DNA of 64,000 bases. Origin: Gekko japonicus (taxonomy: Eukaryota). The position numbers were made by a program, and so were the translations under genes. Every line of letters starts with the position of its first letter. The stretch's first letter is position 1. A model generated the notes under the pieces. It was given only the letters and a program-made list of their open reading frames with translations, was not told where the DNA came from and ran no database searches. Of the stretch, positions 16,198 through 64,000 are shown one piece after another. The stretch spans positions 127,551 through 191,550 of the forward strand of contig NW_015163636.1 in the NCBI RefSeq assembly GCF_001447785.1, read 5' to 3'.

Positions 16198-16390
16198 GGG
16201 GAGGGGCTGTGGCTCAGTGGTAGACCATCTGCTTGGCATGCAGAAAGTCCCAGGTTCAATCCCTGGCGTCTCCACTTAAAAGGGCCCAGCAGTCTGAGAC
16301 ACTGCCTGAGACACTGGAGAGCAGATGCCAGTCTGAATAGACAATACTGACCTTGATGGACGAACGGTCTGATCTGAGGCATATTCATGT
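16198..16390 (+). mobile_element. tRNA-derived SINE (Ala-like head; relatives near 5850, 35930)
   Basis: ggggctgtggctcagtggtaga A box and ggttcaatccc B box, followed by a LINE-like tail. Confidence 0.7.
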
Positions 16391-27135: not shown

Positions 27136-28038
27136 GCTTTTTCCTGGTTTATGCCACTTCAGCACCTCCTTTTCCCTCTCTGGCTGCTGCTGTTTCCTAT
27201 CTCATGGATGAGTCTGTGATCCCATCCAGCCAGTCGTTATGCAGTGAATGGGACGATGTTGCAGCTCTACATAGCCAATCAGATTTGCTTGCCAATGTGA
27301 TAGCATCACTGCAGGCAAGTGAGAGCAACTAAGAGTGAGGGCTATTGAAACAAATCAAACATTTTGGGAAGACATACTCACACATTATGAAAAAGGGGGG
27401 TTTTGCACTGTTGAAAATGTTTATGAAAGGTGGGGAACAGTGTCCAATTAGGTCTGGAATATACTCAGCCATCATACAGTATAACCCCAGGCAGGGCTAT
27501 TTTTGGGCAGGCACGCACAGGAACGGAGTTCCGGCTGGCTCCCGAGCTGGCCACGCCCAGCAGGAACTCATTAGCATAACAGGCCACACCCAACAGCAGC
27601 AACTCATTAGGATTGGCTACATTAGGGGTGTGTGGCCTAACATGCAAAGNNNNNNNNNNNNNNNNNNNNNNNNNNNNNNNNNNNNNNNNNNNNNNNNNNN
27701 NNNNNNNNNNNNNNNNNNNNNNNNNNNNNNNNNNNNNNNNNNNNNNNNNNNNNNNNNNNNNNNNNNNNNNNNNNNNNNNNNNNNNNNNNNNNNNNNNNNN
27801 NNNNNNNNNNNNNNNNNNNNNNNNNNNNNNNNNNNNNNNNNNNNNNNNNNNNNNNNNNNGGGCTACTTTTTACATACTATGGTGATAGTGTCATTAGGTC
27901 TGCCTTCAGTAATGACTGAGGTGGGGTGGGTGTCAGGATGGGAATGGCTGGTTCAGGAAGCAGACACTTTCCTATAGCAGAAAATGCACCGTAACATTCA
28001 TAACCAATGAGATGTTTCCATGGGTCTTTCTCTTTCAG

Positions 28039-28222
28039 CATCCACTGGTGAGGCTAAAGGGTGGAGCCAAGACAGGAGAAGGCCGTGTTGAAGTGCTAAA
28101 GAACAGGGAATGGGGAACCATCTGCCATGACCAGTGGAGCCTGGTTGCAGCCAGTGTGGTCTGTCGAGAGCTGGGCTTCGGAAGCGCCCAGGAGGCTATT
28201 TCAGGCGCAAGGCTCGGGCAAG
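28039..28222 (+). CDS. LOXL2: LOXL2-type coding exon (exon 6), N-terminal half of SRCR3
   Basis: tctttcag|CAT acceptor, AAG|gtaag donor, 184 nt. Translates [61 protein letters not shown]. Confidence 0.95.
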
Positions 28223-29589
28223 GTAAGATGCTTAAAAGGAAAGTGTCTTCGGAGAGGGTAAAGGGGATAGGAGGAAGAGGAAGAGGAAGAAGAAGAAGCA
28301 AGTCACTTGAGTGGCAGCCTATGTCCTTTTCAAAGAAAGAAACATACATTAAAAAATTCTCTTGGATCAAACCAGAGGTCCATCTATGTTGCTTTTCCAC
28401 CGAGGTTGGACAGATGCTTTTGGAGGAGGGTATAAAGGAGGGCATAGGCCATAGCTGTCCCCCACTGTTGCTCCCCGAGAACTGGTATTCAGAGCTGTCT
28501 CTTAACCCGGGAATCCTATTTTATTTATTAATTATTATTATTTATTAAATCGAATTTCTTAATTGCCTAATCTCTGTAGGACAAGGCTCTAGGCGATGTA
28601 CATGGTTTTAAAAGCAATCAGAAGCATTTTAAAAACAATTAAACATCAATACATAAATCCCAGATGGTGCTAATATGTACATTTTTCTCCAACTTACTCT
28701 GGACTGTGCTTTCTTCCCGTGGGTGGGGGAGGGAGAGAAGGCTGAAAAAGCAGGGGCAGAGAAAAGGTGAAGGGAGCCAGCAAGATGGAACCACGCTGCC
28801 CTCAACCAAAGGCCTGGTGGAACACTTCTGCCTTGCAGGCCCTGCGGAATTGCATTAAATCCCGCAGGGCCCTAGTGGAATTTGGCCGAGAGTTCCACCA
28901 GACTGGAGCCAGAGCCAAAAAAGCCCTGGGTCTGGTCGGGGACAGCTGGATATCCTTAGGGCCAGGGATCACCAGTAAGTTGTTCTCTGCAGAGCATAAT
29001 GCTTGTAGTCATCATGGCTAATGGCCTGTGTGATATAACCTATCCTCCATGAGTTTGCCTACTCCCCTTTTAAAACCATGTAAGGTTTAGTCTAAGCCAT
29101 GCAGGCATCACGTGACATATTCATTTGTTTAGAAGAATTTACCACCTCAGGAATGGACCTCAACAGTTTTGTTAGGGGGCCCCCCGTGGTCTTTTCAACC
29201 TGTAGCAATTAGAACATCTACATTTTACTCCCAGGAAGGGAAGTCTTCAGTATCATTTGGCCATCAAGTTTTGATTTCAAATCGTCTGAAAGAATGGAAA
29301 CTATTTAGCTGTCTGTATCTGTGGGTTCTCCTTCCAAAGTACTGACTTCTGCAACTTCCTTTAGGAAGCTTGCAATGGCTTATGCTATTGGGCCCTGGGG
29401 AGAATGTTGTTATTTTTTTCCTAATCCTTTACACCACAGAGTGCAAACAATGTTTTACACTAGTCGCAGACATCACATCATCAGCCTGGAATGCAGTGAG
29501 TATATTGTCTAGCCTTAGATAATGAGCGCCATCACATCCATTCCATAAATGAATTCCATAAGCTAATTATGTATTATGTAATGGATGCA

Positions 29590-30125: not shown

Positions 30126-31492
30126 TTGAGTCTTTTCTGTCCCCCAAGGGTGAAAGTAACTTAAATTTCTTACTGGTACTGTCTCTTGGAGTGGGGCTTG
30201 AAGCAGAAGACTGGAGGTACCACTTTAGCCTCTTTCTTTCTGGTATGCAGTACTGGGTAACTTTCACCCTAGTCTGCTCTGCTGCTGGTTTTACTTTGCA
30301 TTCTTATTGACGAGTTCTGGATGCAAAGATGGTTTGGGCATACTATTTTTGGCTATGATTTCTGCTCGCATTTTAATTGGCTCTCATGTTGCCCTTGCTT
30401 TTTATGATCTTATGCTGTTGGTTTGTTTAATTGGTCTATTATTTTAATTGCTATTGATTTATTGTTTTAATTGCTTTGCCCAGGGTGTTGTGAACTGCAT
30501 GTAGGATACTTTATAGATAGGCAGGATGCAAATATTTTAAATAAACTAATATCATGGACCATACTTACAGACTTGAATGCTACACATTTCTCATTTTCCT
30601 CTCCTCTCCCCATCCATCTTAAATATTTTAGGATCAACCTATTAGTAATATATCAGAAAATACCTGCTGAAGGCTGGCTCTTGATTTCCAAAATCCTCAA
30701 GGCCTGTCCCCTGCTTCTTATATGTGTGGGGAGATACATTACCAAACCAAACAAAACAAAACAAAATTAATAGGTGAAGTGCTTCCAGAACTATGTGGTT
30801 TGGGGAAGGAGAAGGAAAATTAATTTAAAAGCATGAGAAATATTGTGGCTCTCTGGAATCTTGAAAACATGAGTATGCCAGCCAAAGTGCACGCAGAGTG
30901 CTCTGCTATGTAATTGCCGCTACAACTACGGAAGCACCAGCATCACACGAAAATTTTTGACTGCAACGTGATGGGCTGGAGCGTGCTGCCTCTTGCCACA
31001 TTGCACAGCTGGAGCCTGGAAACTTTAGGCATCTGCTCTGGTGCTTTGATTTTCAAGGGCCCAAGCCAATATCAGTCCTGAGAATTAGTATTTCAGAAGA
31101 TGCCACCTCTTAGAGAAGCAAGTTAGCATCTGCTTGTTTGATGGAAGAAAAGAAGAGCCAAGAGTTGCTAGATCACTGCAGAAAGGAAATGTCCCCTCTT
31201 CAGAGGTTCATGTGTCGACAGTTCATCTGGTTTTATCTCAGCATGCTCATCAAACTACAATTCTTCAGAGAAATCCCAGGACAGTAGTATAAGGCCAATA
31301 TACATCTGTAGTATAGATAGGTCTTTTATGGGTTTCCTGCATGTTCTCCTCTAGATTCTTCTTTGGGTTGCGTGATTTCTTTTAAAAACACTAAATATTT
31401 GCACAGCTAGCTGTGCAATGCTGTGCAATGCAGTACATTTCCTTGTGTTCATAAAAAGGGATGTGTAAGATTTGTAAGAGCTGTATGTGTAA

Positions 31493-31850
31493 GAGCTGCG
31501 GTGGCTCAAGTGGTTAAGACGCTGAACTGCAGGCTGTGGAAGGTCAGTAGTTCAGCAGTTCAAGACCCGTGTGCCGCAAGACGGGGTGAGCTCCTGTCTC
31601 TAGTTCCAGCTCCTGCCAACCTAGCAGTTTGAAAGCAAGAAATTGCAAGTAGATAAATAGGTACCACTTCGGTGGGAAGGTAACAGCGTTCCGTGCGCCT
31701 TGGTGTTTAGTCATGCCGGCCACATGACCACGGAAACGTCTTCGGACAGCGCAGGCTCTTCGGCTTTGAAACGGAGATGAGCACCGCAACCCTAGAGTCG
31801 GATTCGACTGGCTTTCGAGCAAGGGAACCTTTACCTTTACCTTTACCTTT
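31493..31850 (+). mobile_element. Full-length Sauria SINE
   Basis: Same head and body, (ACCTTT)4 tail, TSD taagatttg at 31466-31474 and 31850-31858. Confidence 0.9.
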
Positions 31851-32645
31851 AAGATTTGGAAGCAGTGAGGATTGTGGAATGTCAGAAAGCAGCCAAATGT
31901 CAGAAAGAAGCCAAAAACAAAAAAGTAGGTTGCATAATAGTGTAGTGTATTTACTTACTTCATATATACTTCATATATGTTCACTTCATATGTAGTCTGC
32001 TTTTCTCATTAAGACTCAAGGTGGATTACAAACTATAGAAAATTATTAAATCAGACAGCACAAGATATCCAGTAAACAATGCAACAGGATTGCAGAAATT
32101 AGGAAACCATGCCAACAGAAAACTGGCTAAGGCATGATGTCCCAAAATGAGTGCACAAATGCACACATTCAGCAACATCAGGAGAGCCCTTCTCTTTGCC
32201 AGGGTTCCATTATGGAATTTGGTGTTCCTTTTGGGATTCGCAGCAGTGATGCGACGTGGAATCCTGGTGCTTCTCCCTTAGGATGATGTTACTGCCCATA
32301 TTTTGGCCAAGAAAGGAGCAGTCAGTGCTCCACAAAGCATCTCTTTTTCTAGGGGCATAGAAAGCATAATTAATTTAGACTCTTCCAGAACACATTAGGG
32401 TGCACCAGAACACAGTGCTGGAATACCAGATCTCAGTAAATGCATGACCATCAGGGGAATAAGACCCCCCCCAAAAAAATTGCTATTATGCTAATGAGGG
32501 GGAAATTGTATTTTGTAGTAAAAGAATCTCCCGCATTCAAGCTCAGACATCTTGTGAAATCCCTGTATCCTTGGAATCATTGTTAAGGTCAAAACAATTC
32601 TGGAATTCTCAAGTGACCCACCTGTATTTGGGATTGTTTGTTTTT

Positions 32646-33148: not shown

Positions 33149-33300
33149 GACTGGGCCTCATCCATCTCAATGAAGTGGAATGCTTGGGTTATGAAAAGTC
33201 CATCACAGACTGCAAATTCACCACTGACACACAGAGATGCAGCCATGAAGAAGATGCTAGTGTGAGATGTAATGTCCCAGCCATGGGTTTCCAGAACCAG
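33149..33300 (+). CDS. LOXL2: LOXL2-type coding exon (exon 7), C-terminal half of SRCR3
   Basis: tcttaaag|GA acceptor, CAG|gtgag donor, 152 nt. Translates GLGLIHLNEVECLGYEKSITDCKFTTDTQRCSHEEDASVRCNVPAMGFQNQ. Confidence 0.95.
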
Positions 33301-34224: not shown

Positions 34225-35516
34225 TAGGGATGGGCTTGAACCAGGAAAATGGTGGTTCGTGGTGGTTTGTGATTCGTTTGATGACACGAACCATGCGCTT
34301 TCACAAACTCCTCCCATTTCCCAAACCGGTTCATGGTTCATTCAGTTCATGAGTTTGGGAGGTCATAGAACAGCCCCCTCACAAGTTAGAGATGCCAAAC
34401 TCACAGGAAGTCTTCAGCAGGCTCTTCTCCATGTGCCATCCAGGTCTGGCAAAGATTGGATTTGGGATGTCTGTGTTATAGCCCAACAAAGCAGGTGCCC
34501 ACAGGAAAGCTCAGCTCTAGACTCCCCTTAAATTAGCCAGGCAGCAGGCAATTCTTCCTGACTTGCTCCTGTCTCTTCCTGCTGCAAAGTGAAAGCAGCT
34601 GAGTCAGAGTGAGATAGATAGATATAGATATATGTTGTTGTTGTTCAGTCGCACAGTCGCGACCCCATGGACCAGATCACACCAGGCCCTCCTGTCTTCC
34701 GCTGTCCTCCGAAGCTTGCTCAATTTCATGTTCGTTGCATCTATGACACTGTCTAACCATCTCATTCTTTGCCGTCCCCTTCTTCTTTCCCAGCATCAGG
34801 GTCTTCTCCAGTGAGTGCTCCCTTCTCATTTGGTGGCCAAAGTATTTGAGCTTCAACTTCAGGATCTGGCCTTCCAGGGAACAGTCATGGTTGATTTCTT
34901 TTAGGATTGACTGATTTAATCTCCTTGCAGTCCAAGGGACTCTCAAGAGTCTTCTCCAGCACCATAATTAAAAAGAATCTATTCTTCGGCACGGGGCCAC
35001 GGTCATCCGAGGGAAAACTCTATGGTTTTCCCTTGGATAGTCGTGGCCCCGCCCCAGCGTGCCCGGCGTTGTCACGTCACTTCTGGGTGACGTGCGTGCG
35101 GCGCGCACGCGCGCACTCCAGCCACAAGCCGGGAGTCCCACGCTGCAGCTCAAAAAGCACTTGGCAACCCTAAGCACCATAGTTCAAAAGAATCTATTCT
35201 TCGGCGCTTGGCCTTCCTTATAGTCCAACTTTCGCAGCCATACATTATATAGAGATATATACATACACACAATCTGTTCCCATAGACTGCTATGGGTGTT
35301 TCTAGGGCTCTCCACAAGTCTATCCCCAGTGTTGCCTAGGAATTGATTGAATCTGTGCCAGGCTGTCTGGAGGACAAACTGCTCTAATGAACCAAATGAA
35401 CCTCCACAGGAAAAGGTGGTTCGTTTTTCGTTTCGGGAACAATGCAACCAAACGGCATGAATTGGCCTGGTTTGTGCTTGAATTGTGATTCGTTTCTCAG
35501 TTCATGCCCATCTCTA
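34225..35516. mobile_element. Non-autonomous hAT DNA transposon hosting nested insertions
   Basis: TIRs TAGGGATGGGC / GCCCATCTCTA and a perfect 8-bp TSD ATAATAAA at 34217-34224 and 35517-35524. Confidence 0.85.
34633..35245 (-). mobile_element. 5'-truncated RTE-BovB 3' fragment nested in the hAT element
   Basis: (CAA)n tail and peptide RVPWTARRLNQSILKEI...SLEGQILKLKLKYFGH; near-identical to 62458-62825. Confidence 0.9.
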
Positions 35517-36464
35517 ATAATAAACCATGGTGTATTGTGATGGCAGAGTGTGGCTGAACAGAACTTATTGTGAAATAAGCTTGCAATGACTAGATGAGAG
35601 CCCATTTTGTAGGTTCATGAAAATGTAGGCCACAATAATTCTTTCTTTCAGATGCCACAGCACTCCTTTTTTGTTTTTTTATATCTAGGTCTGTATGGTA
35701 CAGTTACTTCCAGTGCAATAATCTGACAATTGCCACTTCTCATACAATCAAGTACAAGGAACATTGTCTTTGATAAAGAGGATCTAGCCAACTGAGAGCT
35801 AATTCACATAAACATGCAGAAAAGCCACTGCTTTTCCTCATGTGCTGCATTCATTTCCTGTTTGGCAAGAGGATTCAAGTTAAGACTTGCTGTGGATGAA
35901 CTGCAGAGCTGTTTAACCCTGGTTATGTCAGGGCCTATAGCTCAGAGATCAGATCTACACTTCGCATGCAGAAGGTTCCAGGTCCAATCCCTGGCATCTC
36001 CAGTTAAAAGGATTTCAGGCTGCAAGTCACAGGAAAAATTCTTGGTGGATTATGCTTGAGGCTTTCTATTCTGTGTTCTGCCCTGCACTCACCATATCCC
36101 ACAAGATAATATTTTGGAGTTGTTGTTGTTCCTTTTTTTCTCCATTTTCAATACATTAACAAGTTATGATCACACAGTTTTAAAAAGAGAAATGTTTAGC
36201 ATGAGGCTATGTTCTTTTGTTCCATAATAATATTCTGGGGGAGGCAACTTACTTGTTATCTATGTTGCTAAGGAAACACCATAAGGAAATACAAGGGATG
36301 TCAGAAACACCTGAAAAGATGCCCATGTATTTGTAGCTACTTGTAGCTGTACCTGTTTAGGAGAGAAGTTAGTGGCAAAAAATTATGGATGCCTCCAGCC
36401 TAGCAAAGAACAACAGGATTTGCCACTGAACAGCTATTTGTATCTGAGTAGGCCTCTCAGAGTT

Positions 36465-36535
36465 GCGCCGCTGGTGTAGTGGTATCATGCAAGATTCCCA
36501 TTCTTGCGACCTGGGTTCGATTCCCGGGCGGCGCA
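36465..36535 (+). tRNA. tRNA-Gly(CCC) copy, probably a retrocopy of a pre-tRNA inside a chimeric insertion
   Basis: 71-nt cloverleaf: acceptor stem GCGCCGC/GCGGCGC, anticodon stem CAAGA/TCTTG with CCC at 36497-36499, GTTCGA T-loop. Matches the conserved vertebrate Gly-CCC sequence as I recall it except C>T at 36512 (U:G in the T stem). No CCA; followed by acaaattcTTTT. Confidence 0.92.
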
Positions 36536-36548
36536 ACAAATTCTTTTA

Positions 36549-36900
36549 GGAGCTGCGGTGGCTCAAGTGGTTAAGACGCTGAACTGCAGGCTGTGGAAGG
36601 TCAGTAGTTCAGCAGTTCGAGACCCGGGTGCCGCATGATGGAGTGAGCTCCCATCTCTAGTTCCAGCTCCTGCCAACCTAGCAGTTTGAAAGCAAGAAAT
36701 TGCAAGTAGATAAATAGGTACCACTTCAGTGGGAAGGTAACAGCATTCCGTGCGCCTTGGTGTTTAGTCATGCCGGCCACATGACCACGGAAACGTCTTC
36801 GGACAGCGCTGGCTCTTCGGCTTTGAAACAGAGATGAGCACCGCAATCCTAGAGTCGGACTCGACTGGCTTTCGAGCAAGGGAACCTTTACCTTTACCTT
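36549..36900 (+). mobile_element. Full-length Sauria SINE, the 3' part of the tRNA-SINE chimera
   Basis: tRNA-like head (GGTGGCTCAAGTGG A box, GTTCGAGAC B box) and (ACCTTT)n tail; near-identical to the copies at 31493, 37477 and 58393. Confidence 0.9.
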
Positions 36901-37476
36901 TAGGCCTCTCAGGCTTTGTCATAGCATATGTTTCTGCAGTGATGATGTTACTTTGAAGGAGAGAGTGCACTGCAGGCTGGTTCACATATGCACATATATT
37001 GTTTTGTTCTCTAGATTTGAATATTCTAAAATTGATGTCTGAGGATTGATTAATTTACTCTTGGAAGCTGTGCCTGTGGTGTTATATCCCTGATGACATA
37101 ATCTCATATGAAAGTCGTGACTGGAATGTTGATGTAAATCATCAGGACCCTGCACTGCAGAGCCATCTTGGGAAATAATAGACACTTGGAAAGCCTGCAG
37201 ATTTTGGGTGTCAATTTTCAGTACACAGTAAGCATTACAAAAATGCATTTTACAATGCATTTTACAAGCTGGATCCAGCACTTGGTCAATTGTGCTTACA
37301 AAAGACCCACAGCATATGCAGGCTCTTCAAGCAGCTACTGTTACCCAGAGGTCATTTGAATCAGATTTCGGACTACATTTGTTTGGATTCCTGTGGGAAA
37401 GGGAAGATCTTCCAGGGATATTTTACCCTGTTTGTGAGCAGCAGAGGGACATTTAAAGAGGGTTCTAATCAACATT

Positions 37477-37709
37477 CTCCTGCCAACCTAGCAGTTCGAA
37501 AGCAAGAAATTGCAAGTAGATAAATAGGTACCACTTTGGTGGGAAGGTAACAGCGTTCCGTGCACCTTGATGTTTAGTCATGCCAGCCACATGACCACGG
37601 AAACATCTTCAGACAGCGCTGGCTCTTCGGCTTTGAAATGGAGATGAGCACCGCAACCCTAGAGTCGGATTCGGCTGGCTTTCGAGCAAGGGAACCTTTA
37701 CCTTTACTT
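37477..37709 (+). mobile_element. 5'-truncated Sauria SINE
   Basis: Body and ACCTTT tail only; TSD taatcaacatt at 37466-37476 and 37710-37720. Confidence 0.88.
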
Positions 37710-39049
37710 TAATCAACATTGGGAGCTTTTCGTCCTTCCCTCAAGTCACCTTCAAATGATGGCTCAGGATCGCAGTTGGCAGGCAGGCCCTGAACTTTGT
37801 AGACCTGTATCTCAGTTGCTTGGCCAAACACCACTTATTCCACTTAGTTTAACATCTGTGTTCTTTTGGAACCTGATAGCAACAGATATTTTGAGCAATA
37901 TCGTAACACTTCTTCAGGCTTTGTGCCTCCTCCTCATTCTCTGCTAAACTTCTTATTGATGAGAGCATAAAATTTTTTTGTTCTGTCTTGTACCTAAAAC
38001 TCAAAACCCACTCTTTTTGAGGGTGTGAATACTGGATATCAGAGTTTGGAGTGAGGAAGAAAGGAGTTCAGCCAGCGGCAAGATGAGCAGCAGCAGTCAG
38101 TAATGCAAACCCCTGACCTCCCTGACAAAGACAATTTTAAAACCTTCATAGACATAGGGCCTGGGGGCAAGGTCATGAAATTCAGCTAATGCCTTAAAAC
38201 CAGGCCATGTGTGGATCTGTCCCTTACAGATTGACCCATAGAGTCTGGGTCAGACAGGGGGACCAAATACATTGCACAATCCATCTGGCCAAAATGCACT
38301 AAGCCAACTTGGCAGCCCACTTAAGAGTCAATAAAGGGTCTCTTGTTGTTCCTGCCCTCCTAAGGACTGCAATTAGTCTAGCACTGCCAAGCTCAATATA
38401 TGCCTGGCGAGCTGTTTGGCTCCACAGGTCACAAGTTGTGCAGTCTGGAATACCACTGGAAAGTATTTTGAGATAGGCTTGCTCTGCTGTGGGGCTCCAC
38501 ATTCCTGGAGATTTGGGGATGGAGCCTGGAGAAGGCAGGGTTTTTGGAGGGGAAGATCCTCAAGAGGGTATAATGCCACACAGTCCACCTTCCAAAGCCG
38601 CCATTTTCTCCAGGGGACCTAATCTCTGTAGTCTGGAAATCAGGTGGCTTGAGTGCATCTCTTTTTTCTCCCACCACTAAACTTACCAAGAGCAAACAGG
38701 GGCAGAAGGTTGCCCACCATAGATGGTTTTCCACCTAGGGTTGCCAATCAACAGATGGTGGCTGGAAATCTCCAACTATTACAATTGGTCTCCAGGCAAC
38801 AGAAACCGTTTACCTGGAGAAAATTGCTACCTTGGAAGGTTGCCCACCACAGGAAGGCAACTGGCAGCCCTACGCCCAAAGACACCCAGTGAGCTTCCAT
38901 GGCAGAGTGAAGATTCAAACCTGAGTCTCCAAGATACTGTGGTGACATTCTAACCCAATGGCACTTACTCTGCGGCTTGCATAGAGCCAGATTTTCAATT
39001 ACCATGAACCAAAAGAGCCACACATCACTCCAAAACACACATACAACAA

Positions 39050-40569: not shown

Positions 40570-40737
40570 ATACGTTTGAGCGGTGGCCGTATACCCTCAG
40601 AAGGTCGCGTAGAAGTCCTCCGGAATTACAACGGCACGCTTAAATGGGGAGCAGTCTGTAGTGACAACTGGGGCACCTTAGAAGCCATGGTGGTTTGCCG
40701 CCAGCTGAACCTTGGCTATGCTGAGCATGCATTTCAG
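40570..40737 (+). CDS. LOXL2: LOXL2-type coding exon (exon 8), N-terminal half of SRCR4; not in the supplied ORF track
   Basis: ctacag|ATA acceptor, CAG|gtatgt donor, 168 nt. Translates [56 protein letters not shown]. Confidence 0.95.
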
Positions 40738-43700
40738 GTATGTTGATGCCTCTTGTTTGGATGGAGGGACATAAGCCCAAGAATAAATAAATAATAAATA
40801 AGCAATACTCTCTCAAGAGACTGTATAAGTGTGGGTTTTAACTGGGGATTTGTGGCACCTTAAAGACTAATTTTATTCCAGTACAAACTTTCATGGACTA
40901 GTTTAAGCTGGCATAACATTTTGTTAAGATGCCACAAGACTTTCTGATTCTTTTTGCTGCAACAGACTGCATCCTAAGCAGAGCTGCACCCTTCTAAGCT
41001 CATTGACCAGTGGATTTAGAGGAGTATAACTCTGCTCTAAGATTGCACCGTACAAACCTACCTTGTGGCTTTATCTGGGCAATGTAAATTGTGATAGAAT
41101 AAGGCACTTGTGAGCACTTACACCTTGGACACAGTCTGCAATTCTGCAAGGTTCCGATATACATATGGACATTTGCAACACATAAGAACATAGGAACAGC
41201 CTTATTGGACAGAGCAATGATCCAGCAAATCCAGGATTCTGTTTCTAGCAGTGGCCAGATGATTTTGTGTTGTCATAAACAGAACATAAGGGTGATTAAG
41301 GTCTCTCCTGCTATATGGCCCTAACATCTGGTATTTAGAGATCTATTGTCTGGGGGTCAAACTGCACATTTTTACATGAGTTGCCAATGGGGGCTAGCAG
41401 CCATTTTGGATCAGGACCATGGTACAGGGGGGAGGGACTCCCTAGGCTACGATTCCCAGACCACTTCAGCTCCTCCTTTCCCCCATGCCATGGTCCCAAT
41501 CTGAATTGGGCCCCAGGTGTACTTTTTTATGCAGGAGTTGCCACCAGGGACTTGCAGCTGCAATATGGCTGCAAATCCCCATGGCAAACTCATGTAAATC
41601 ATAAGGCCCTCTCTTTAACTCTCCTGACAGTTTTCAGCTGTATCTTCTGCAATTTGTCTAAGTCCAAAGCAACAAGCTGCTCCCTTGACCGTGTTCCGTC
41701 CACAGAACAGGGAATCCCAATCACATGAGTCTTTCTGGTAGACAAACAAGGAAATCCTCAAATTCCTGTCCCTCATAACTCCTTTAATGCGCTATTTAAA
41801 CTAGTCCTTCATCTAGTCCAGGAGTCCCCAGTCTTTTTGAGCCTGCAAGTACCTTTGGAATTCAGACTCAGGATGGTGGGCACAAATACAGAATGGCTGG
41901 AACACGGGAGGCAGAGCCAACCACAGAATGTTAAGGTTATGCATAACTCTAATAGGAACACTTTAACATTTCAGGCAGAAGCTCTGTTTGATATCTTTTA
42001 AGATATCTTCTAAGATATCAGAGTGAGATCCAGTTTGGTGTAGCGGTGAAGAGCTGCGGACTCCAATCTGGAGAACCAGGGGCGATTCCTCACTCCTCCA
42101 CATGAAGCCAACTGGGTGATCTTGGGCCACTCACAGTTCTCTCAGAGCTCTCTCAGCCCCACCTAACTCACAGGGTGTCTTTTGTGGGGAGAGGAAGGGA
42201 AGGTGTTTGTAAGCTGCTCCGAGATGCCTTCGGGTAGTGAAGGGCAGGGTATAAAACCATTAAAACTGAACATATTTAAAACTATTTGCTTGCAACCATA
42301 CAGCTTACCTTCAGTCACTCACTGAAGATCCTTGTGCTTTGGTGGGAGCTGCTGCCAAAGGCATTTTGGTTTACTAATCTGCTCAGCCAGTCAGAAGGCC
42401 TGCTGGGCAGAAGGCCCACATGGCCCTGCCTACTTTCTAAAAACACTTGATCGGCACCAGGAAGGTGGTGGGCACAAGGGTGCCTGCGAAAAACCAAATG
42501 TATTGGCTGTCAACTTTTGTAGGGTGAGTTATTGTGCTAATATGAAGCAAGTTATGTAGTTTGCAGTATCCATGGAAAATTCTGGAAAGTACCAAGCCAA
42601 ATTGTGGTAGAAGCCAGACAATATAATAGCTCTGCAACAGCAGCAGGATCTAATATAGAAACAAAAGATCCCAGGAGGATACTTAGGATTAAATAACACT
42701 GAAGCAAACAAGAGAACCAGACCACCCCTATTTTAGTGAGCCTGCACTAGAAGAAGGGGTACTAAAACCACTTCACAGAGCTTTATTAAGGGTATCACTT
42801 TTGCCTCAATAATGTCCACTGGAATCCCACACAAGAATCTCCCTCCTTGCTGTGCCTCCAGCTCTAATTGAACCTGCCACCAGCTGTGCTATGCTGAGTA
42901 TAGTATTTATTAATTACATTTGTGTCCCACCCTTTATCAAAGGAGCTCGGGGTGGAGTACGTAAGGATTACTTCATTTGAGGAACAGGCCCACTGGCTCC
43001 TTCAAAATCCAGACTTGTTTTGGGGATGAGTGAGCAACCATTCGCTTTCTGAGATATTCTGCAGTGCTGTGGCAAAGGGTCAAATGACACATCTCTCCCT
43101 TATAATAAAGCAGTAGTGGGGACCAACGTTCTAAAATGCCCGCCTTTAGTGTTTGGCCGGAAGAACTGCCACTCAGAAGACACTGGCTGGGTTGACTGGC
43201 TGCTTTGTGCAGTCCCGCCCAGTGTTCCAAGGTCATTTGCATATGGAAGCTGATTGGACTTCACTCCATTCCACACCTCAAACGCCCCCCCCCGCAAGGC
43301 AGTTGGAATTTTCAGTTGCATATGGGAACTACTGTATTCTGAGGTAACATATGTCCTCACTCACAACACATCACTTCCCCTTTAAAAGAAACAAACCCAA
43401 TAACACAATCACGCCACACCACAAAGAAGACAGATCACACCACAAGCAGAATACCTCAAGGCAAAAAATGATAGGAAAAGGTGCCAGCAGTCACCCCATT
43501 ACTGCCACAGATGGTGTGCAGGTCCCAGGTTCATGTTTTAAAAGCTGCCTGGGGGACTATGGACCATTCACACACTTTCAACCATAACATACCTCATAGG
43601 ATAGTTGTGCGGATCATACGGGGGAGAGGAGAATGATGTCAGCTGCTTTGGTTCCCACTGCAGGGAAAGACTGCCCTTTCCCTAGGCAGAGGCTGGTAGG

Positions 43701-53396: not shown

Positions 53397-53640
53397 CCGC
53401 CGCTGACCTCTATGTCAATGCCAAGGAGGTGGAGTACACATCATACCTTGAAGACCGTCCAATGTACATGCTGCAGTGCGCACTTGAGGAGAACTGCCTG
53501 GCCTCCACGGCTGTCAACACATCTGTTACCACCGGTTACAGGAGGCTTCTGCGTTTCTCCTCCCAGATTCACAACGTCGGGCAGGCAGACTTCCGCCCTA
53601 GACACGGGCGCCATGCCTGGATTTGGCACGAATGTCACAG
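53397..53640 (+). CDS. LOXL2: LOXL2-type coding exon (exon 10), start of the lysyl oxidase catalytic domain; GC donor
   Basis: ctccag|CC acceptor, CAG|gcaagc non-canonical donor, 244 nt. Translates AAADLYVNAKEVEYTSYLEDRPMYMLQCALEENCLA...RRLLRFSSQIHNVGQADFRPRHGRHAWIWHECHR. Confidence 0.93.
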
Positions 53641-56600
53641 GCAAGCATTTGGCCTTCCCCTTCAGTGTTGTAGACTGTAAAAAAGGCAGATAGAATCCAG
53701 GTATTACCTAGAGTATTACCAATTGAGGGACTAAAGGAGAGCAATAAACACACAGGTAGAGTTTTGTACTGCTAGATTATAGAGGTTCATTTATTGAGTT
53801 TACTGAGGTATATAGACTTGCAGCTGCCGGAGTCTTCCAGAAAACTGGCCTGGACAGCAGACTTGGGGATCCCCTGGAAGTATTATTGACTCTCATTGCA
53901 TCTACAACACATGGTGCAAATACAAGTTTTCTCTACCACCCACTGGGTGAAAGATCACTATGCCTCTTGAGCCATTCTGCCCACTGCTGCAATAGCAATT
54001 AACCAATCATAAGGAATATATCCCTTCTCTTAACAGGGATAAGTTCCAGGTAGAATATTATGCAAACATGGTAAGCCTGGTGATAGAACCATCTTCTCAT
54101 GTTACAGAAACCATCCCCTCATGTTAAGATGATCTTAGTCATTATTTTATTATTAGTTGCAGAGTATTCTAGTGCTGTTCTCATTTCGGTTTCCAGTTGG
54201 CCACTGATGAGAGACTGGGGGGGGGGACACTGGGGGGGGCATCATTGGAACATTGGTGTAACATCACTTCCAGAACAAACCAGGAAGTGACATAATTGCA
54301 TCAACATGACACCTTAGAGTTTGCATCTAGGATTTCAAGTTTACCCCAGAAGTGATATCATATTGTGACAGTTATTTTTGACGCATCTCTACTGAGTTTC
54401 TTTCCCGCACTAAATGCTGCCCTTCCAATGGTCTGCCCCCAAATATCCAGGAACTTTCCAATTTGGAGTTGGTAACCCTAATTATGATCTGTCAGGTGCT
54501 AGACAATTAGCCAGCCACTATATTTGTTGCAGTCGTAAGCAGCCTGCAAGTGCAGGCGCTTTGCCAAGGCCCTGGTAAGCTGCCAAGCTTGGCTGGTGGG
54601 CCACATTCGGCTGGGTGGATCACAAGTTCTCCAGGGCTGTCCTAGTTTAATTCCACAGATTACCAAAAACCGGGTCACATCACAGCCTGGTTACAAAGGG
54701 CTGAGCCCTCTGACATTTCCGAATAGGCCATGTTTAAGTGAGCCTGCCTGTGTATTTAACAGGTCTCTGTTTGCACAGAGGACTACGGACTCAATTCCTC
54801 TTCAGAATTTCCAGTCTGTAAACACTGTAGCATAAACACCTTTTTGAATGATACAGACATATTTTAGGAACGCGGTCAGACCTGAAGTTTAATCTTTTTT
54901 TTTTTTTTTGCTCTGGAAATAACCCGACCAGCCAACTTCAAAGTAAATAGTTTGGAAGCCTCAAAATGCCTCCTCTTCCTCCTCCCTCTCCAACGGTCTC
55001 ACTATTAACTGTGTGCTTCTGTTCAGGACACGGAAGCAAGGCGGGGTGGGGGAAGGAAGGAATGGGGAAAGCCATTTAACAGGCAGGTAAAGGTAAATGA
55101 AGAGCACCTGGAAGAAATTTTTAATCACAGTGATTTTTTTGGATCTTGTATTCCTTTAGGAGAAAAAATGCCTTGTTCCTCACCTTATGTCAACACGATT
55201 TTAACGAGGATAAATACATTGGTATATTAGGCATTGCTACCTGATCCCCAGTGTCAGATGTTTCCTGTTAAGCCACAATTTATTTTTGCAGATGAAAAGG
55301 GGGCTTACTTTTCAGTCGCTTGGTTTCCCTTAGCTAAACTGGGAAGTGTTTGTTTTGTTGGCGGAATCCTATGCTTGGTTTTCCATGTACATACATAGCA
55401 GAACAGAAATCGGGCACTGCTTAGGAGAAGGGCTTACTGCCATGAACTGGCAGAGTGGCTAGAGGGTTGAGTGTAGTTATGGGAGATCTGCTACCAATCC
55501 CTGGTCAGCTGTGTCCCTGGAAACGTCCTAATCTCTCAGGCTAGCCCATTTCACATGATTGTTGTAAGGCACAAAAGCCATGTAGGCTTTTCAGAGTAAG
55601 GCATTTGTAACAAAGAGTGTCATTCAGATGTCCAGAATCACCATATTTTCCTTTTCTAGAACAAAGTATGCCATTACTAGCATCCATAAAAATTATAATT
55701 AGGAATGCCAGGCCCATACCCGCACTATCTGGGGGCTGTTTTGGGACAGGGCGAGGAAGGTGACAGAGCCACACAGCCAATCCCTGAAACACTCTAGGAA
55801 TCCCCAAAATTCTAGAATGTTGCAAGGGGAGGGGGTCACTTCTGGGTCTGTGCCGGGGAAGCGATGTGGAAACATCAGCGACATTGTTCCCCCTCCCCCC
55901 ATTTCCTCCTCCTGCTGCTGCTGTTGAACAGAGGGAGGGCAGGGGCAGGAATTCCCACACCCTCAGTGGACACCTAGCAGTCCTAATTATAATACTTGGA
56001 TTAAGCACATCTGTAGTGCTTCCTTCCTCCAAAGACCACAAAGCTAATTCTTTCTCAGACTACCAAACTACGCTTTCCAGAATTTGCAGGCAGCCATGAT
56101 TGCTAAACTGCTATAAAACGAATGCCATGTTGTGACTTCTTTCAGGGTGTAGAAGCCGTGGCTATTCTATGCCTGAGGTATAATCGTTTGTGGTTTGATA
56201 CTCAGTAAGGTGCTCCCCCTCCCATGAAACTCCCTCCCAAATGGCACCCCCATGTGGCAAAGAAGAGCAACAAGATGCCAAACTATCAAGTGTATGGTTA
56301 CCAACCTCCAAGTGGGGCCTGGAGTTCTCCCAAAATTACAACTGACCTCCAGACTACACTTTTCAGTTCCCATGGAGGAAATGACAGCTTCCGGTGGCAG
56401 TCTCTGCTGAGCACCTCCCTCCTCCCCAGGCATTGCCCCCAAATCTCCACCAATTTCCCACACCACAGCTCACCCGACTGTGTCTGGTGAAGATCACATG
56501 CAGTGTCATGGACCCCAGTTTCCAGCTTTATACAACCATTTACCTATATGGACTAGCAAAGTGATTTTTGTATTTATTAATTTGCAGAAACTGTGCAGCT

Positions 56601-57894: not shown

Positions 57895-58010
57895 GCATTA
57901 CCACAGCATGGAGGTGTTCACACATTACGATCTGCTAGATCTCAATGGCACCAAAGTGGCTGAAGGAAACAAGGCCAGTTTTTGCCTGGAAGACAGTGAG
58001 TGTGCACCTG
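57895..58010 (+). CDS. LOXL2: LOXL2-type coding exon (exon 11), copper-binding His and LTQ Lys
   Basis: ctcacag|G acceptor, CTG|gtacgt donor, 116 nt. Translates [38 protein letters not shown] and completes the WHxCHxHYH copper motif. Confidence 0.95.
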
Positions 58011-58392
58011 GTACGTACATTTCTGCATGCCCCACTGGCTGGGATTGCAGTTGATTTGTTTCAATGCTGTAACATTTTGCACAAGTGTAGGAAAGCACAT
58101 GGAAGGACCAAAGTACCAGGCCTTCTGTGGACTTAATTCTTTATATTCCATGGTGTAGCAGCAGGGGATTTGAAAGACCCAGTTTTCCGATACAAATCTG
58201 CCCGACGAGATTATCATCAGAAGCCTTTCTCCAGTTATCCCCAACATCAGAAGTAAGGAATGGATCTACTGTAGACAGTGCCTTTTTAGTGATTGCACCC
58301 TTCTTACAGAACTCCCACCCAAAGGATGTTTTCCTGGCACCATAGGCATGCGACAAAATCTTTTCTATTTACATGTGTCTTTGGAAGTTATT

Positions 58393-58730
58393 GGAGCTGC
58401 GGTGGCTCAAGTGGTTAAGACACTGAACTGCAGGCTGTGGAAGGTCAGTAGTTCAGCAGTTCGAGACCCGGGTGCCGCATGACGGAGTGAGCTCCCATCT
58501 CTAGTTCCAGCTCCTGCCAAACTAGCAGTTCGAAAGCAAGACATTGCAAGTAGATAAATAGGTACCACTTCTGTGGGGAGGTAACAGCGTTCCGTGCGCC
58601 TTGGTGTTTAGTCATGCCGGCCACATGACCACGGAAACGTCTTTGGACAGCGCTGGCTCTTCGGAAATGAGCACCGCAACCCTAGAGTCGGATTCGACTG
58701 GCTTTCGAGCAAGGGAACCTTTACCTTTAC
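58393..58730 (+). mobile_element. Full-length Sauria SINE
   Basis: Head, body and ACCTTT tail; TSD ctttggaagttat at 58379-58391 and 58731-58743. Confidence 0.9.
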
Positions 58731-59438
58731 CTTTGGAAGTTATATTGGAACATCATATAACTACAATCCGGTTTTCTATCAGTTCAATTTGGGAGTCTAG
58801 ATTCATTTCTCCATTTTGTATTGGAGAAATTGTATTCTCAATTTGCCTGTTTCAACAATAGCTAGTTATCAAATCTATAGCCATGTTTATGGTCTGGAGC
58901 GTTTGTTGGTCCTACAAATGTGAGGGGACCCAGGGACTCTCTTGAGCAATTAACTCCGATACAAAGATCTGGGGTTTGCCTGATATACAAACAAGGGTTG
59001 TTCCCCTCCACCCCTTTTCGTGTTTGGAATGCCCCAAACTGTGTATACATGTGAATGCACACACTTCCTGAGTGGACAGAAAAATGGACTCCTTTCATTT
59101 GATAGTGGAGGAATCTTCTGCTGGAATTAATATAGGCACCCTTGTAGATAAGGGAGTTCTATTTACACCCACTTTCATTTAATAATATGGGGGCCATCAA
59201 CTGTGCTATATCTTCCACATACTCCCTCCATGGTTTGTTTACTACATTTCCTCTGTCCCATTTCCTCTGTCATCTGTCCCTAATTATAGGACTCATAGTA
59301 ACAGATGCCATGGCCTATGTTTAGCCTCACGGGACAAGTGATTAAGACTGCCAAAAAAATAGCACATGGGAACAAGTGAATGTCATTTGTTACACCACAG
59401 GTCTAATCCGAACAAGGACCCTGTTAAGATGCAACTTG

Positions 59439-62217: not shown

Positions 62218-62457
62218 GTGAGTAGAAAAACGGCTGAAAAGATGTGCTCCATATCAAATTGGTATGGAAGTACCTGACACTTCATGTGTATTGCTGCCTG
62301 CCATATGTCATGCATGCCCTGTAGAGGGGTAACCAAACTGCTAATCACATGGCTTCATAAAGCTGTCTTATACTGAGTCAGATCATTGGATCATCTGGCT
62401 TGGCATTGTCCGTTCTGACTGGCAGCTGCTATCTAAGCAGTTAAATGTCTTCTCCAG

Positions 62458-64000
62458 TTGTTGTTGTTGTTCAGTCGCACAGTTGAGTCCGACTCTTCGC
62501 GACCCCATGGACCAGCTCCCGCCAGGTCTTCCTGTCTTCCGCCGTCCTCTGAAGTTGGCTCAATTTCATGTTAGTTGCATCTATGACACTGTCTAACCAT
62601 CTCATCCTTTGCCGTCCCCGTCTTCTTTGACCTTCAATCTTTCCCAGCATCAGGGTCTTCTCCAGTGAGTGCTCCCTTCTCATTTGGTGGCCAAAGTATT
62701 TGACTGATTTGATCTTCTTGCAGTCCAAGGGACTCTCAAGAGTCTTCTCCAGCACCATAGTTCAAAAGAATCAATTCTTCGGCGCTCGGCCTTCCTTATA
62801 GTCTAACTCTCGCAGCCATACATGACTACTGGTGTGGTGCTGCTCGTTAGGGTGTGGGGTGCAGGGGTGCAGGCAATTCAAAGACGACAGGATACAAGCT
62901 TGCAGGAACTGTCTGAATGAAGGAAGGAAGGAACCTCCTCCTCTCACGCAGCAGGTTTATTTATACACCTTTCTTCCCCCTTCTCCCCCCCTCTCCCTCC
63001 ATAAGGGAGTTACAAGCATTAGAGCATCCTTTTGGAATGTGTGTGTGTGTGTGTGTTCAAGTTCTCTCAGGCAAGTTCTTATCAGTTGCTCCCCCTCTTC
63101 AAGGTTAAACCATCTGCGTAGTGATCAGTAAACAGATTCCATCTCGGCCTCTCATGACGTACAAGCATTTCAGCTCCCAACCTCCAGCCAGGAGAATAGT
63201 GATTTATTCTGCACTGCTGTCCTACATACTGGGAATACCATTGCTTTGACCATGCGGACTTTTGTTGGCAGGGTGATGTCTCTACTTTTTATCATGCTGT
63301 TTAGGTTCGCCATCGCTTTCCTCCCAAGGAGCAGGCGTCTTTTAATTTCATGGCTGCAGTCACAGTCTGCGGTGATCTGGGATCCCAGGAACGTGAAGTC
63401 TGTCACTACTTCCACAGCTTCCCCTTCTATTTGCCAAGGAGTGATGGGGCCGGATGCCATGATCTTAGTTTTTTTGATGTTGAGCTTCAAGCCCACTTTT
63501 GCGCTCTCCTCTTTTACCCTGAGCAAGAGGCTCTTGAGGTCCTCTTCACTTTCTGCCATCAGAGTGGTATCGTCTGCATATCTGAGGTTGTTGATCTTTT
63601 CCCCAGCAATCTTAATTCCCGCTTGTGATTCATCCAGGCCAGCATTTCGCATGATGTACTCTGCATATATATTAAATAAGCAAGGCGACAATATACATCC
63701 TTGTCGTACTCCTTTTCCTATGCTGAACCAATCAGTTGTTCCATATCCGGTTCTAACTGTCGCTTCTTGGCCCTTATACAGGTTTCTCAAGAGACATGTG
63801 AGGTGGTCTGGTACTCCCATCTCTTTAAGGCCCTGCCATAGTTTGTTGTGATCCACACAGTCAAAAGCTTTAGCATAGTCAATGAAGCAGAAGTAGATAT
63901 TTTTCTGGTACTCTCTTGCTTTCTCCATAATCCAGCGAATGTTGGCAATATGATCTCTCGTTCCTCTACCTCTTCGAAACCCAGCTTGTACTTCTGGTAG
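62458..64000 (-). mobile_element. RTE-BovB LINE, 3' portion running off the window, interrupted by a solo LTR
   Basis: The minus-strand ORF has reverse-transcriptase motifs (FIDYAKAFDCVDH, GVRQGCILSP, LRYADDT) and BovB C-terminal peptides (YFGH.MRR..SLEKTLMLGKIEG.RRRGRQRMRWLD), with a (CAA)n tail at 62458-62472. An internal ~57-bp deletion at 62701 relative to the 34633 copy has TTGA microhomology. Confidence 0.93.
62833..63226 (-). mobile_element. Solo LTR (394 bp) inserted in BovB
   Basis: TG...CA termini; perfect 6-bp TSD TACTGG at 62827-62832 and 63227-63232; TATAAATAAA on the minus strand near 62956-62965. Removing it restores contiguous BovB. Confidence 0.85.

What the first reader, a model, noticed from the sequence alone, without database searches (positions are those of the whole stretch)
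36449..36912. Chimeric retrocopy: unprocessed pre-tRNA-Gly(CCC) fused to a full-length Sauria SINE inside one target-site duplication
Seen in sequence: the 12-mer TAGGCCTCTCAG occurs at 36449-36460 and 36901-36912. It brackets, in order, a 4-nt purine-initiated leader (AGTT), an essentially perfect tRNA-Gly(CCC) without CCA, a trailer ending in a Pol III terminator (ACAAATTCTTTT), one A, and a Sauria SINE from its first base to its (ACCTTT)n tail. The SINE has no TSD of its own, unlike the other three copies in the window, so tRNA and SINE inserted as one unit. Established knowledge: Sauria SINEs share their 3' end with RTE-BovB and are thought to be mobilised by it; U6/L1-type chimeras are known for L1; R2-type reverse transcriptases can jump from the 5' end of one RNA to the 3' end of another. 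Inference: either (a) BovB RT finished the SINE template and jumped onto the UUUU end of a nascent pre-tRNA, or (b) a tRNA gene read through a weak T4 terminator into a downstream SINE, founding a composite SINE. Either way the copy keeps its A/B boxes, leader and terminator. It could therefore be an expressible new tRNA gene, a route for tRNA gene birth by hitch-hiking on a SINE. I do not know a described example for the RTE/Sauria system.
Basis: partly seen in the sequence, partly recalled or inferred. Interest (0 to 1): 0.85.

Follow-up and report, generated by a model that had tools for sequence, protein, structure and literature searches.

The report
Pre-tRNA-Gly fused to lizard SINE retrocopy
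A complete, unprocessed glycine tRNA transcript and a full-length lizard SINE were pasted into an intron as one unit, probably because the reverse transcriptase jumped from one RNA to the other; this kind of event is already known, and whether the new tRNA copy is used could not be tested.

Summary
A perfect 12-bp direct repeat (36449-36460 and 36901-36912) brackets, in order:
- a 4-nt leader;
- an intact tRNA-Gly(CCC) (Rfam 58.9 bits);
- a 12-nt trailer ending in the only T4 of the unit;
- one extra A;
- a full-length Sauria-type SINE with an (ACCTTT)3 tail.

The SINE has no repeat of its own. Three other copies in the window have 9-13-bp repeats directly at their ends.

The 5' repeat starts TA, 10 nt downstream of TTT. 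That is the published BovB/Sauria target signature, and 0.4% of window positions fit it. So the tRNA and the SINE entered in one BovB-type retroposition.

Best reading (about 0.6): the reverse transcriptase jumped end-to-end from the 5' end of the SINE RNA onto the UUUU 3' end of a primary tRNA transcript. The natural ends of two RNAs meet with a single nucleotide between them.

Rivals are a daughter copy of a read-through or composite source, two sequential insertions, and RNA ligation before reverse transcription.

The kind of event is already known. U6 chimeras with RTE LINEs and with a SINE were described in Anolis, and SINE-to-tRNA switching was proposed for birds.

The decisive tests could not be run: parental gene, copy number, orthologous empty site, expression.

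Unchecked scan notes list other chimeras in this genome (U6-SINE, mRNA-Sauria tail), but not this unit.

The parts
36437..36439 (+). TTT stretch 10 nt upstream of the first base of the target-site duplication (the 'Tn' of the Tn-TA signature)
   Evidence: The signature is described in PMC13295347 and PMC6007223.
36449..36460 (+). 5' copy of the target-site duplication TAGGCCTCTCAG; it starts with TA
   Evidence: only two hits in the window; chance below 1e-3. TA start plus TTT at -10 fits 0.4% of window positions.
36461..36464 (+). pre-tRNA 5' leader AGTT, purine first; GUU pairs with AAC of the trailer
   Evidence: fold.
36465..36535 (+). tRNA-Gly(CCC), 71 nt, no CCA. A box at 36472-36482 and B box at 36514-36524. 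T at 36512 gives a U-G wobble in the T stem.
   Evidence: ARAGORN; Rfam, 58.9 bits, full length; cloverleaf, z -4.4; box positions.
36536..36547 (+). 3' trailer ACAAATTCTTTT, ending in the Pol III terminator T4 (36544-36547)
   Evidence: the only TTTT in 36441-36915.
36548..36548 (+). single extra A between the U-run and SINE base 1. Probably untemplated, or a -1 start of the SINE RNA.
   Evidence: The other copies carry different extra bases at the same place: T at 58392 and a 17-nt filler at 31475-31490.
36549..36900 (+). full-length Sauria-type SINE. A box 36559-36570, B box 36614-36624, BovB-like 3' box 36851-36867, (ACCTTT)3 tail 36884-36901.
   Evidence: 5 differences in 349 nt from the in-window majority, 3 of them CpG transitions; 16/17 match to the BovB 3' end at 62496-62480.
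36901..36912 (+). 3' copy of the target-site duplication; its first T is shared with the SINE tail
31466..31858 (+). comparison copy: SINE 31491-31850 with TSD TAAGATTTG and a 17-nt 5' filler
58380..58743 (+). comparison copy: SINE 58393-58733 with TSD TTTGGAAGTTAT and one extra T at its 5' end
37466..37720 (+). comparison copy: 5'-truncated SINE 37477-37710 with TSD TAATCAACATT
62457..63928 (-). BovB LINE copy, the presumed autonomous partner: 252-aa RT ORF, C-terminal ORF and (CAA)n tail
   Evidence: ORFs; RVT_1, 8e-28; tail; box shared with the SINE.

Best explanation
This is a bipartite chimeric retrocopy made in one BovB (RTE-clade) target-primed reverse transcription event.

Proposed sequence of steps:
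1. The endonuclease nicked the intron at a TTT-N10-TA site.
2. Reverse transcription started on the (ACCUUU)n tail of a Sauria SINE RNA and ran to the RNA's first base.
3. One extra nucleotide was added.
4. The enzyme jumped onto the UUUU-3' end of a nascent, unprocessed pre-tRNA-Gly(CCC) and copied it to its 5' start.
5. Second-strand cleavage 12 bp away gave one TSD around the whole unit.

Shown: the anatomy, the single TSD, the target signature, the intact Pol III features, and similar small divergence of the two parts.

Inferred: the jump itself, the identity of the enzyme, and that the copy can be transcribed. If transcribed, it would act as a tRNA gene when the T4 works, or as a dimeric, retroposition-competent proto-SINE when the T4 is read through.
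For: - One perfect 12-bp repeat brackets both parts, and there is no repeat at the inner junction.
- Three other copies of the same SINE have 9-13-bp repeats directly at their own ends.
- The 5' repeat lies upstream of the tRNA leader. It starts TA exactly 10 nt after TTT, as published for Sauria SINEs (PMC13295347), and only 0.4% of window positions fit.
- The inner junction joins two natural RNA ends with one nucleotide between them. One is the only T4 of the unit, which is where Pol III stops. The other is base 1 of the SINE, as defined by two other full-length copies.
- Under read-through the spacer could have any length. Under an end-to-end jump, 0 to a few nt is what is expected.
- Extra bases at the SINE 5' end differ between copies (A, T, a 17-nt filler), so they are additions and not SINE sequence.
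- The tRNA part has a leader, a trailer and no CCA, and the leader pairs with the trailer.
- Divergence is alike in the two parts. The SINE has 5 differences in 349 nt from the in-window majority, mostly at CpG. The tRNA has one CpG-type change in 71 nt, judged by the U-G wobble in its T stem.
- A BovB copy with an RT ORF and a (CAA)n tail is in the window. It shares a 16/17 box with the SINE 3' region.
- There is precedent: template-switch chimeras of U6 with RTE LINEs and with a SINE in Anolis (PMC4476161).
Against: - No parental tRNA-Gly(CCC) locus with the same leader and trailer was found or could be sought.
- The copy number of the junction in the genome is unknown.
- TAGG, the start of the TSD, also occurs at the trailer/SINE junction (36547). 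That has a 1-in-64 chance and would fit two sequential insertions.
- The extra A is not explained by base pairing with a U-ending acceptor.
- RTE-clade enzymes are 'stringent', and template jumping by a BovB RT has not been shown biochemically to my knowledge.
Confidence: 0.6

Rival explanations
1. Daughter copy of a composite source. Elsewhere in the genome a tRNA-Gly(CCC) unit sits directly upstream of a Sauria SINE, either by chance insertion or from an earlier chimera. Pol III read through the weak T4, and the dimeric RNA was retroposed here through its SINE tail. This locus would then belong to a young tRNA-Gly-headed dimeric SINE lineage and would not be the place where the fusion happened.
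For: - The same single TSD and the same target signature are expected.
- T4 is the minimal vertebrate Pol III terminator, and it is the only one in the unit (the terminator rule is my own knowledge).
- The SINE has no T4 of its own, so a read-through RNA would carry the whole tail.
- Composite heads such as 5S-Sauria exist in Repbase (PMC5786205).
Against: - A chance SINE insertion exactly 1 nt after a terminator is improbable. The roughly 12 nt before the SINE would then be that insertion's TSD, yet they show neither a TA start nor TTT at -10.
- None of the three other SINE copies in the window carries the tRNA-Gly head.
- If the source was itself a template-switch chimera, the mechanism is the same and only the place differs.
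Confidence: 0.18
2. Two sequential insertions. First a solo pre-tRNA retrocopy entered with the 12-bp TSD. Later a SINE inserted at the very start of its 3' TSD copy with a TSD of only 4-6 bp (TAGG or TTTAGG).
For: - TAGG occurs at 36449, 36547 and 36901, and TTTAGG at 36545 and 36899. The sequence can therefore be parsed as TSD, pre-tRNA, TAGG, SINE, TSD.
- Tailless tRNA and pre-tRNA retropseudogenes are reported, in the green anole too (PMC5322556; PMC4476161).
Against: - It needs a second insertion at exactly the same nick.
- It needs a TSD far shorter than the 9-13 bp of the other copies.
- It needs a SINE missing, or sharing, its first two G.
- The TTT part of the match is expected anyway, because a terminator and a tail both end in T. 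Only AGG is then left to chance, at 1 in 64.
- A solo pre-tRNA copy made by a stringent RTE enzyme is unexpected, yet the 5' TSD shows the RTE signature.
Confidence: 0.07
3. RNA-level fusion before reverse transcription. The pre-tRNA 3' end was ligated to the SINE RNA 5' end, as RtcB does for U6/L1, and the joined RNA was then retroposed as a single template.
For: - RNA ligation precedes the retrotransposition of U6/LINE-1 chimeras (PMC6789731).
- The end-to-end junction of two complete RNAs fits ligation as well as it fits a jump.
Against: - By my own knowledge, RtcB needs a 2',3'-cyclic phosphate and a 5'-OH. A nascent pre-tRNA ends in UUUU-OH and a primary Pol III SINE transcript starts with a triphosphate.
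- The extra A at 36548 is not explained by ligation, unless the SINE RNA started one base early.
Confidence: 0.05
4. No single event: an old resident tRNA-Gly(CCC) gene with a SINE inserted next to it and a coincidental 12-mer, or a misassembled junction.
For: - tRNA genes are common insertion neighbours, by my own knowledge.
- The junction could not be checked against reads.
Against: - The 12-mer match has a chance below 1e-3.
- The SINE lacks a TSD of its own, although all three other copies have one.
- The 5' repeat carries the BovB target signature.
- The repeat ends 4 nt before the tRNA, at a plausible Pol III start.
- The nearest assembly gap is 8.6 kb away, at 27650-27859.
Confidence: 0.04

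Closest known systems
U6 snRNA chimeras with LINEs and SINEs formed by template switching (U6/L1 in mammals; U6/RTEX-2, U6/L2 and U6/AnolisSINE2 in Anolis; Doucet et al. 2015, PMC4476161)
   Same: - A Pol III small RNA sits 5' and a retroelement 3', in the same orientation, inside one TSD.
- It has been shown for RTE-clade LINEs and for a SINE in a lizard.
   Different: - The acceptor here is an unprocessed pre-tRNA with leader and terminator, not U6.
- The donor is a full-length Sauria SINE (BovB partner), not a truncated LINE or an L2-dependent SINE.
- A tRNA has internal promoters, so the copy keeps a complete transcription unit. A U6 copy does not.
PittSINE origin in passerine birds (Suh et al., bioRxiv 10.1101/081950)
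   Same: The proposed scenario is the same: a template switch from a SINE RNA to a tRNA during TPRT, giving a TSD-flanked tRNA-SINE chimera that can found a new SINE.
   Different: - That case is inferred from consensus sequences of a multi-copy family and involves a CR1 enzyme. The switch replaced the old head.
- Here there is a single locus, a BovB-type enzyme, and a switch at the very end of the SINE, so both heads are kept in a dimeric structure.
tRNA/LINE-1 chimeric insertions (bioRxiv 10.1101/2025.02.02.635956)
   Same: A tRNA-derived part and a retroelement sit within one TSD.
   Different: Those tRNA parts are mostly half-length and antisense, and are explained by twin priming. Here the tRNA is full length, in sense, and carries a leader and a trailer.
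Tailless pre-tRNA retropseudogenes (Schmitz et al. 2004, cited in PMC4476161; Noll et al. 2015, PMC5322556)
   Same: A retrocopy of a tRNA precursor, not of the mature CCA-ended tRNA.
   Different: Those are solo, L1-dependent and often 3'-truncated. This one is complete and rides on a SINE tail.
snoRTE of platypus and RTE-based SINE birth (PMC5322556; Kojima 2018, PMC5786205)
   Same: A cellular small RNA is joined to an RTE-recognised 3' part, which makes it retroposition-competent.
   Different: Those are high-copy families whose founding event is gone. Here there may be a founding-type event at one locus, but the copy number is unknown.
Bov-tA SINE of ruminants: a tRNA-derived head on a BovB-derived Bov-A unit. 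That the head is tRNA-Gly is my recollection of Lenstra 1993 and Okada & Hamada 1997, and was not verified here.
   Same: A tRNA head joined to a BovB-dependent non-autonomous element.
   Different: It is an established family in mammals. The head origin could not be confirmed in the paper library.

Membership tests
Template-switch bipartite chimeric retrocopy | Two unrelated RNA-derived parts in the same orientation, with the retroelement part 3' and carrying its tail | tested here: met
   the pre-tRNA lies 5' and the SINE with its (ACCTTT)3 tail lies 3', both on the + strand.
Template-switch bipartite chimeric retrocopy | One TSD around the whole unit and none at the inner junction | tested here: met
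   The caveat is a shared TTTAGG at the inner junction.
Template-switch bipartite chimeric retrocopy | Endonuclease target signature of the mobilising LINE at the outer 5' repeat | tested here: met
   TTT-N10-TA, which fits 0.4% of window positions. The signature is taken from PMC13295347.
Template-switch bipartite chimeric retrocopy | The parental genes of the two parts are separate in the genome | not testable with these tools
Template-switch bipartite chimeric retrocopy | Empty orthologous or allelic site with a single copy of the target | not testable with these tools
   Searches gave no access to other individuals or species.
Sauria SINE (BovB partner) | tRNA-like head with A and B boxes | tested here: met
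   A-box-like motif at 36559 and B-box-like motif at 36614. Rfam and ARAGORN do not call it a tRNA.
Sauria SINE (BovB partner) | (ACCTTT)n 3' microsatellite | tested here: met
   the feature is described in PMC13295347.
Sauria SINE (BovB partner) | 3' region shared with the BovB LINE | tested here: inconclusive
   only a 17-nt box (16/17) matches the BovB copy in the window. No consensus library was at hand.
Functional tRNA gene | Cloverleaf, anticodon loop, and intact A and B boxes | tested here: met
   The only irregularities are the 13:22 mismatch in the D stem and a U-G wobble in the T stem.
Functional tRNA gene | Pol III terminator shortly downstream | tested here: met
   T4 at 36544-36547, 9 nt after the discriminator base.
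Functional tRNA gene | Transcribed, processed and charged; conserved under selection | not testable with these tools
   There was no access to reads. tRNA-seq or Pol III ChIP would be needed.
Composite (tRNA-Gly-headed) SINE family | Many copies with the same junction, each in its own TSD | tested here: inconclusive
   None of the 3 other SINE copies in the window has the head.

The most novel reading that the evidence does not exclude
The locus is the founding event itself. A BovB-driven template jump did two things at once. It created an expressed extra tRNA-Gly(CCC) gene, in an isoacceptor subfamily that usually has about two genes in vertebrates (PMC2680898). It also created a dimeric tRNA-Gly/Sauria proto-SINE able to spread. 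That would be direct single-locus evidence for tRNA gene birth and SINE head acquisition by hitch-hiking on a SINE.
Probability: 0.2. Interest if true: 0.65.

Novelty: new member of a known kind. Interest (0 to 1): 0.42.

Why it matters
How SINEs acquire new Pol III heads has been inferred from family consensus sequences (PMC5786205; bioRxiv 10.1101/081950). The founding chimeras are normally eroded.

This locus is young. Its TSD is perfect, its divergence from the in-window SINE majority is about 1.4%, and every junction is still readable. It shows two complete Pol III transcripts joined end to end by a BovB-type machinery.

A tRNA carries its promoter inside, and this retrocopy also kept its terminator. 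It is therefore a candidate for a retroposed, self-sufficient tRNA gene.

If genome-wide screens find more such units, they would give the rate and the junction rules of template jumping by RTE-clade enzymes in vivo.

Tried and rejected
- As a precaution, the tRNA letters were not sent to any external search afterwards. The one external sequence look-up used the trailer and the SINE head only, and it was blank, which means nothing.
- Nine ORFs around the site were looked up by exact sequence, and none is in the protein collection.
- The search for homologous proteins with the 99-aa ORF of the right flank found no candidate.
- The search of protein representatives with a LOX exon returned exon-sized fragments and full-length relatives.
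- A megablast of the SINE against the phage collection found no match, as expected.
- Scan notes by words gave no parental tRNA-Gly gene.
- A tRNA-Gly origin of the Bov-tA head could not be confirmed in the paper library.
- Rejected: the SINE having its own TSD. Nothing beyond TTTAGG is shared.
- Rejected: an L1-type insertion. There is no TT/AAAA site and no poly(A).
- Rejected: a mature-tRNA retrocopy. There is no CCA, and the leader and trailer are present.
Full report
**What is there.**
- TAGGCCTCTCAG lies at 36449-36460 and again at 36901-36912. These are the only two matches in the window, even with one mismatch allowed.
- Between them, in order: AGTT (36461-36464); a 71-nt tRNA-Gly(CCC) at 36465-36535; the trailer ACAAATTCTTTT (36536-36547); one A (36548); and a 352-bp SINE (36549-36900) ending in three ACCTTT units.
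- ARAGORN calls the tRNA. Rfam RF00005 matches it over its whole length at 58.9 bits against a gathering score of 29.
- The T4 at 36544-36547 is the only TTTT in the whole unit.
- The tRNA has no CCA.
- Its A box (36472) and B box (36514) match the usual consensus forms. The consensus forms are from my own knowledge.
- Folded with leader and trailer, it forms the cloverleaf, and the leader GUU pairs with the trailer AAC (z -4.4).
- The T at 36512 makes a U-G wobble in the T stem, where a C would make a C-G pair. It sits in a CpG context.
- From memory, the conserved vertebrate Gly-CCC subfamily 1 has C at that position. I could not verify this with a tool.

**The SINE and its relatives in the window.**
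BLAST of the unit against the window finds three more copies: 31491-31850 (96%), 58393-58733 (93.5%) and the 5'-truncated 37477-37710.
- The alignment shows that the focal copy starts at the same first base as the two full-length copies and ends in the same tail.
- Each other copy has its own direct repeat right at its ends: TTTGGAAGTTAT, TAATCAACATT and TAAGATTTG.
- The focal SINE has none. The bases before its 5' end and after its tail share only TTTAGG.
- Against the majority of the four copies, the focal SINE differs at 5 of 349 positions, three of them CpG transitions. The tRNA shows one CpG-type change in 71 nt, so the two parts look equally young.
- The (ACCTTT)n tail is the one reported for Sauria SINEs (PMC13295347).
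- A BovB LINE copy lies at 62457-63928 on the minus strand. It has a 252-aa RT ORF (Pfam RVT_1, 8e-28) and a (CAA)n tail.
- That LINE shares a 16/17 box with the SINE 3' region.

**Is the repeat a real target-site duplication?**
- A 12-mer that starts within 3 nt after a 352-bp element and recurs within 200 nt upstream is expected at 4.5e-5. It occurred at 8e-4 of 192,094 random window positions, a figure inflated by true repeats.
- Independently, Nakatsuka and Ohshima (PMC13295347) and Nishiyama and Ohshima (PMC6007223) report a target signature. TSDs of Sauria SINEs start with T, usually TA, about ten nucleotides downstream of TTT.
- The focal 5' repeat starts TA at 36449, and TTT lies at 36437-36439, exactly 10 nt upstream. 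Only 0.4% of window positions fit this rule.
- The signature sits upstream of the tRNA leader, not at the SINE's own 5' end.
- I therefore take it as established that the tRNA and the SINE were inserted together by a BovB-type machinery.
- The one reservation is that the assembly could not be checked against reads.

**Mechanism.**
The inner junction joins two natural RNA termini. One is the U-run where Pol III stops, and the other is base 1 of the SINE. A single A lies between them.
- In an end-to-end template jump this is the expected picture. The extra base fits the additions seen at the 5' ends of the other copies, which are a T at 58392 and a 17-nt filler at 31475-31490.
- In the read-through model the spacer could be any length. 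A SINE sitting exactly 1 nt after a terminator would be a rare accident.
- Also, the bases before the SINE do not look like a Sauria TSD.
- I estimate a likelihood ratio of some tens in favour of a jump. That figure is my inference, not a computed result.
- The sequence cannot tell whether the jump happened at this locus or earlier, in a master copy of which this is a daughter.
- One observation cuts the other way. TAGG, the start of the TSD, also occurs at the junction (36547). The sequence can therefore be read as TSD, pre-tRNA, TAGG, SINE, TSD, which means two insertions at the same nick. That needs a 4-6-bp TSD and an exact coincidence of sites. Only AGG is unexpected (1 in 64), so I rate it low but keep it open.
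- RNA ligation before reverse transcription, shown for U6/L1 (PMC6789731), is a further rival. The end chemistry of nascent Pol III transcripts fits it poorly, by my own knowledge.

**Context.**
The unit lies in sense orientation in an intron of a LOXL2-like gene.
- SRCR exons lie near 28048-28224, 33175-33290 and 40576-40740.
- Lysyl-oxidase exons lie at 53402-53641 and from 57872.

**What is known.**
- Template-switch chimeras are well described for L1.
- Doucet et al. 2015 (PMC4476161) found U6 chimeras in Anolis with L1, L2 and RTE-clade LINEs, and six with AnolisSINE2. They concluded that switching is a general property of non-LTR elements.
- Suh et al. (bioRxiv 10.1101/081950) proposed a switch from a SINE RNA to a tRNA as the origin of PittSINE.
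- Kojima 2018 (PMC5786205) proposed the same route for RTE-derived SINEs.
- tRNA/L1 chimeras are reported, but they are mostly half tRNAs in antisense (bioRxiv 10.1101/2025.02.02.635956).
- Pre-tRNA retropseudogenes are known as solo, L1-dependent copies.
- The latest study of BovB and Sauria insertion sites does not mention chimeras.
- So this is a new member of a known kind. Its own features are a complete primary tRNA transcript as acceptor, a full-length Sauria SINE as donor, and a retained Pol III unit.
- Gly-CCC subfamily 1 usually has about two genes in vertebrates (PMC2680898). An expressed third copy would not be trivial, but expression was not tested.

**Limits.**
- Exact and homology look-ups of flank ORFs found nothing.
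- Four things remain untested: the parental gene, the copy number of the junction, the orthologous empty site and expression.
- Unchecked first-reader notes of this scan list other chimeras in the same genome: U6 with a SINE, an mRNA with a Sauria tail, and a retrocopy with an L2-type tail. They are leads for a genome-wide screen, not support.

Noticed in passing
window 31461-31494: The SINE copy at 31491-31850 has a complex 5' junction. After the TSD TAAGATTTG (31466-31474) comes a 17-nt filler. The filler repeats the SINE start (AAGAGCTG at 31476 and 31491) and a 10-mer of the upstream flank (ATGTGTAAGA at 31461 and 31485). It looks like repeated jumps or microhomology joining at the end of reverse transcription.
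   Followed up: partly
window 36449, 36547, 36901: TAGG, the first four bases of the TSD, also lies at the trailer/SINE junction (TTTAGG at 36545 and 36899). This is either a 1-in-64 coincidence or a trace of two insertions at the same nick.
   Followed up: partly
window 12800-13110 (-): A 5S rRNA-like head (Rfam 43.1 bits, 12993-13110) is followed by a Deu-type core with an internal duplication of about 90 nt. This is a 5S-headed SINE of another family.
   Followed up: no
window 16203-16274 (+): A tRNA-Ala(GGC)-like sequence (Rfam 53.2 bits) is followed by non-tRNA repeat sequence. It is probably the head of a different tRNA-derived SINE and not a tRNA gene.
   Followed up: no
window 62457-63928 (-) and 34677-34946 (-): BovB LINE pieces. 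One has an uninterrupted 252-aa RT ORF and a (CAA)n tail, which suggests fairly recent BovB activity in this genome.
   Followed up: partly
window 36461-36547: The leader GUU is complementary to the trailer AAC and extends the acceptor stem by 3 bp in the predicted pre-tRNA fold. This is consistent with both flanks coming from one native tRNA gene.
   Followed up: partly
window 53402-53641 and 57872-58054: Lysyl-oxidase catalytic exons of a LOXL2-like gene. The best representative matches to the first exon are 63-88% identical.
   Followed up: no
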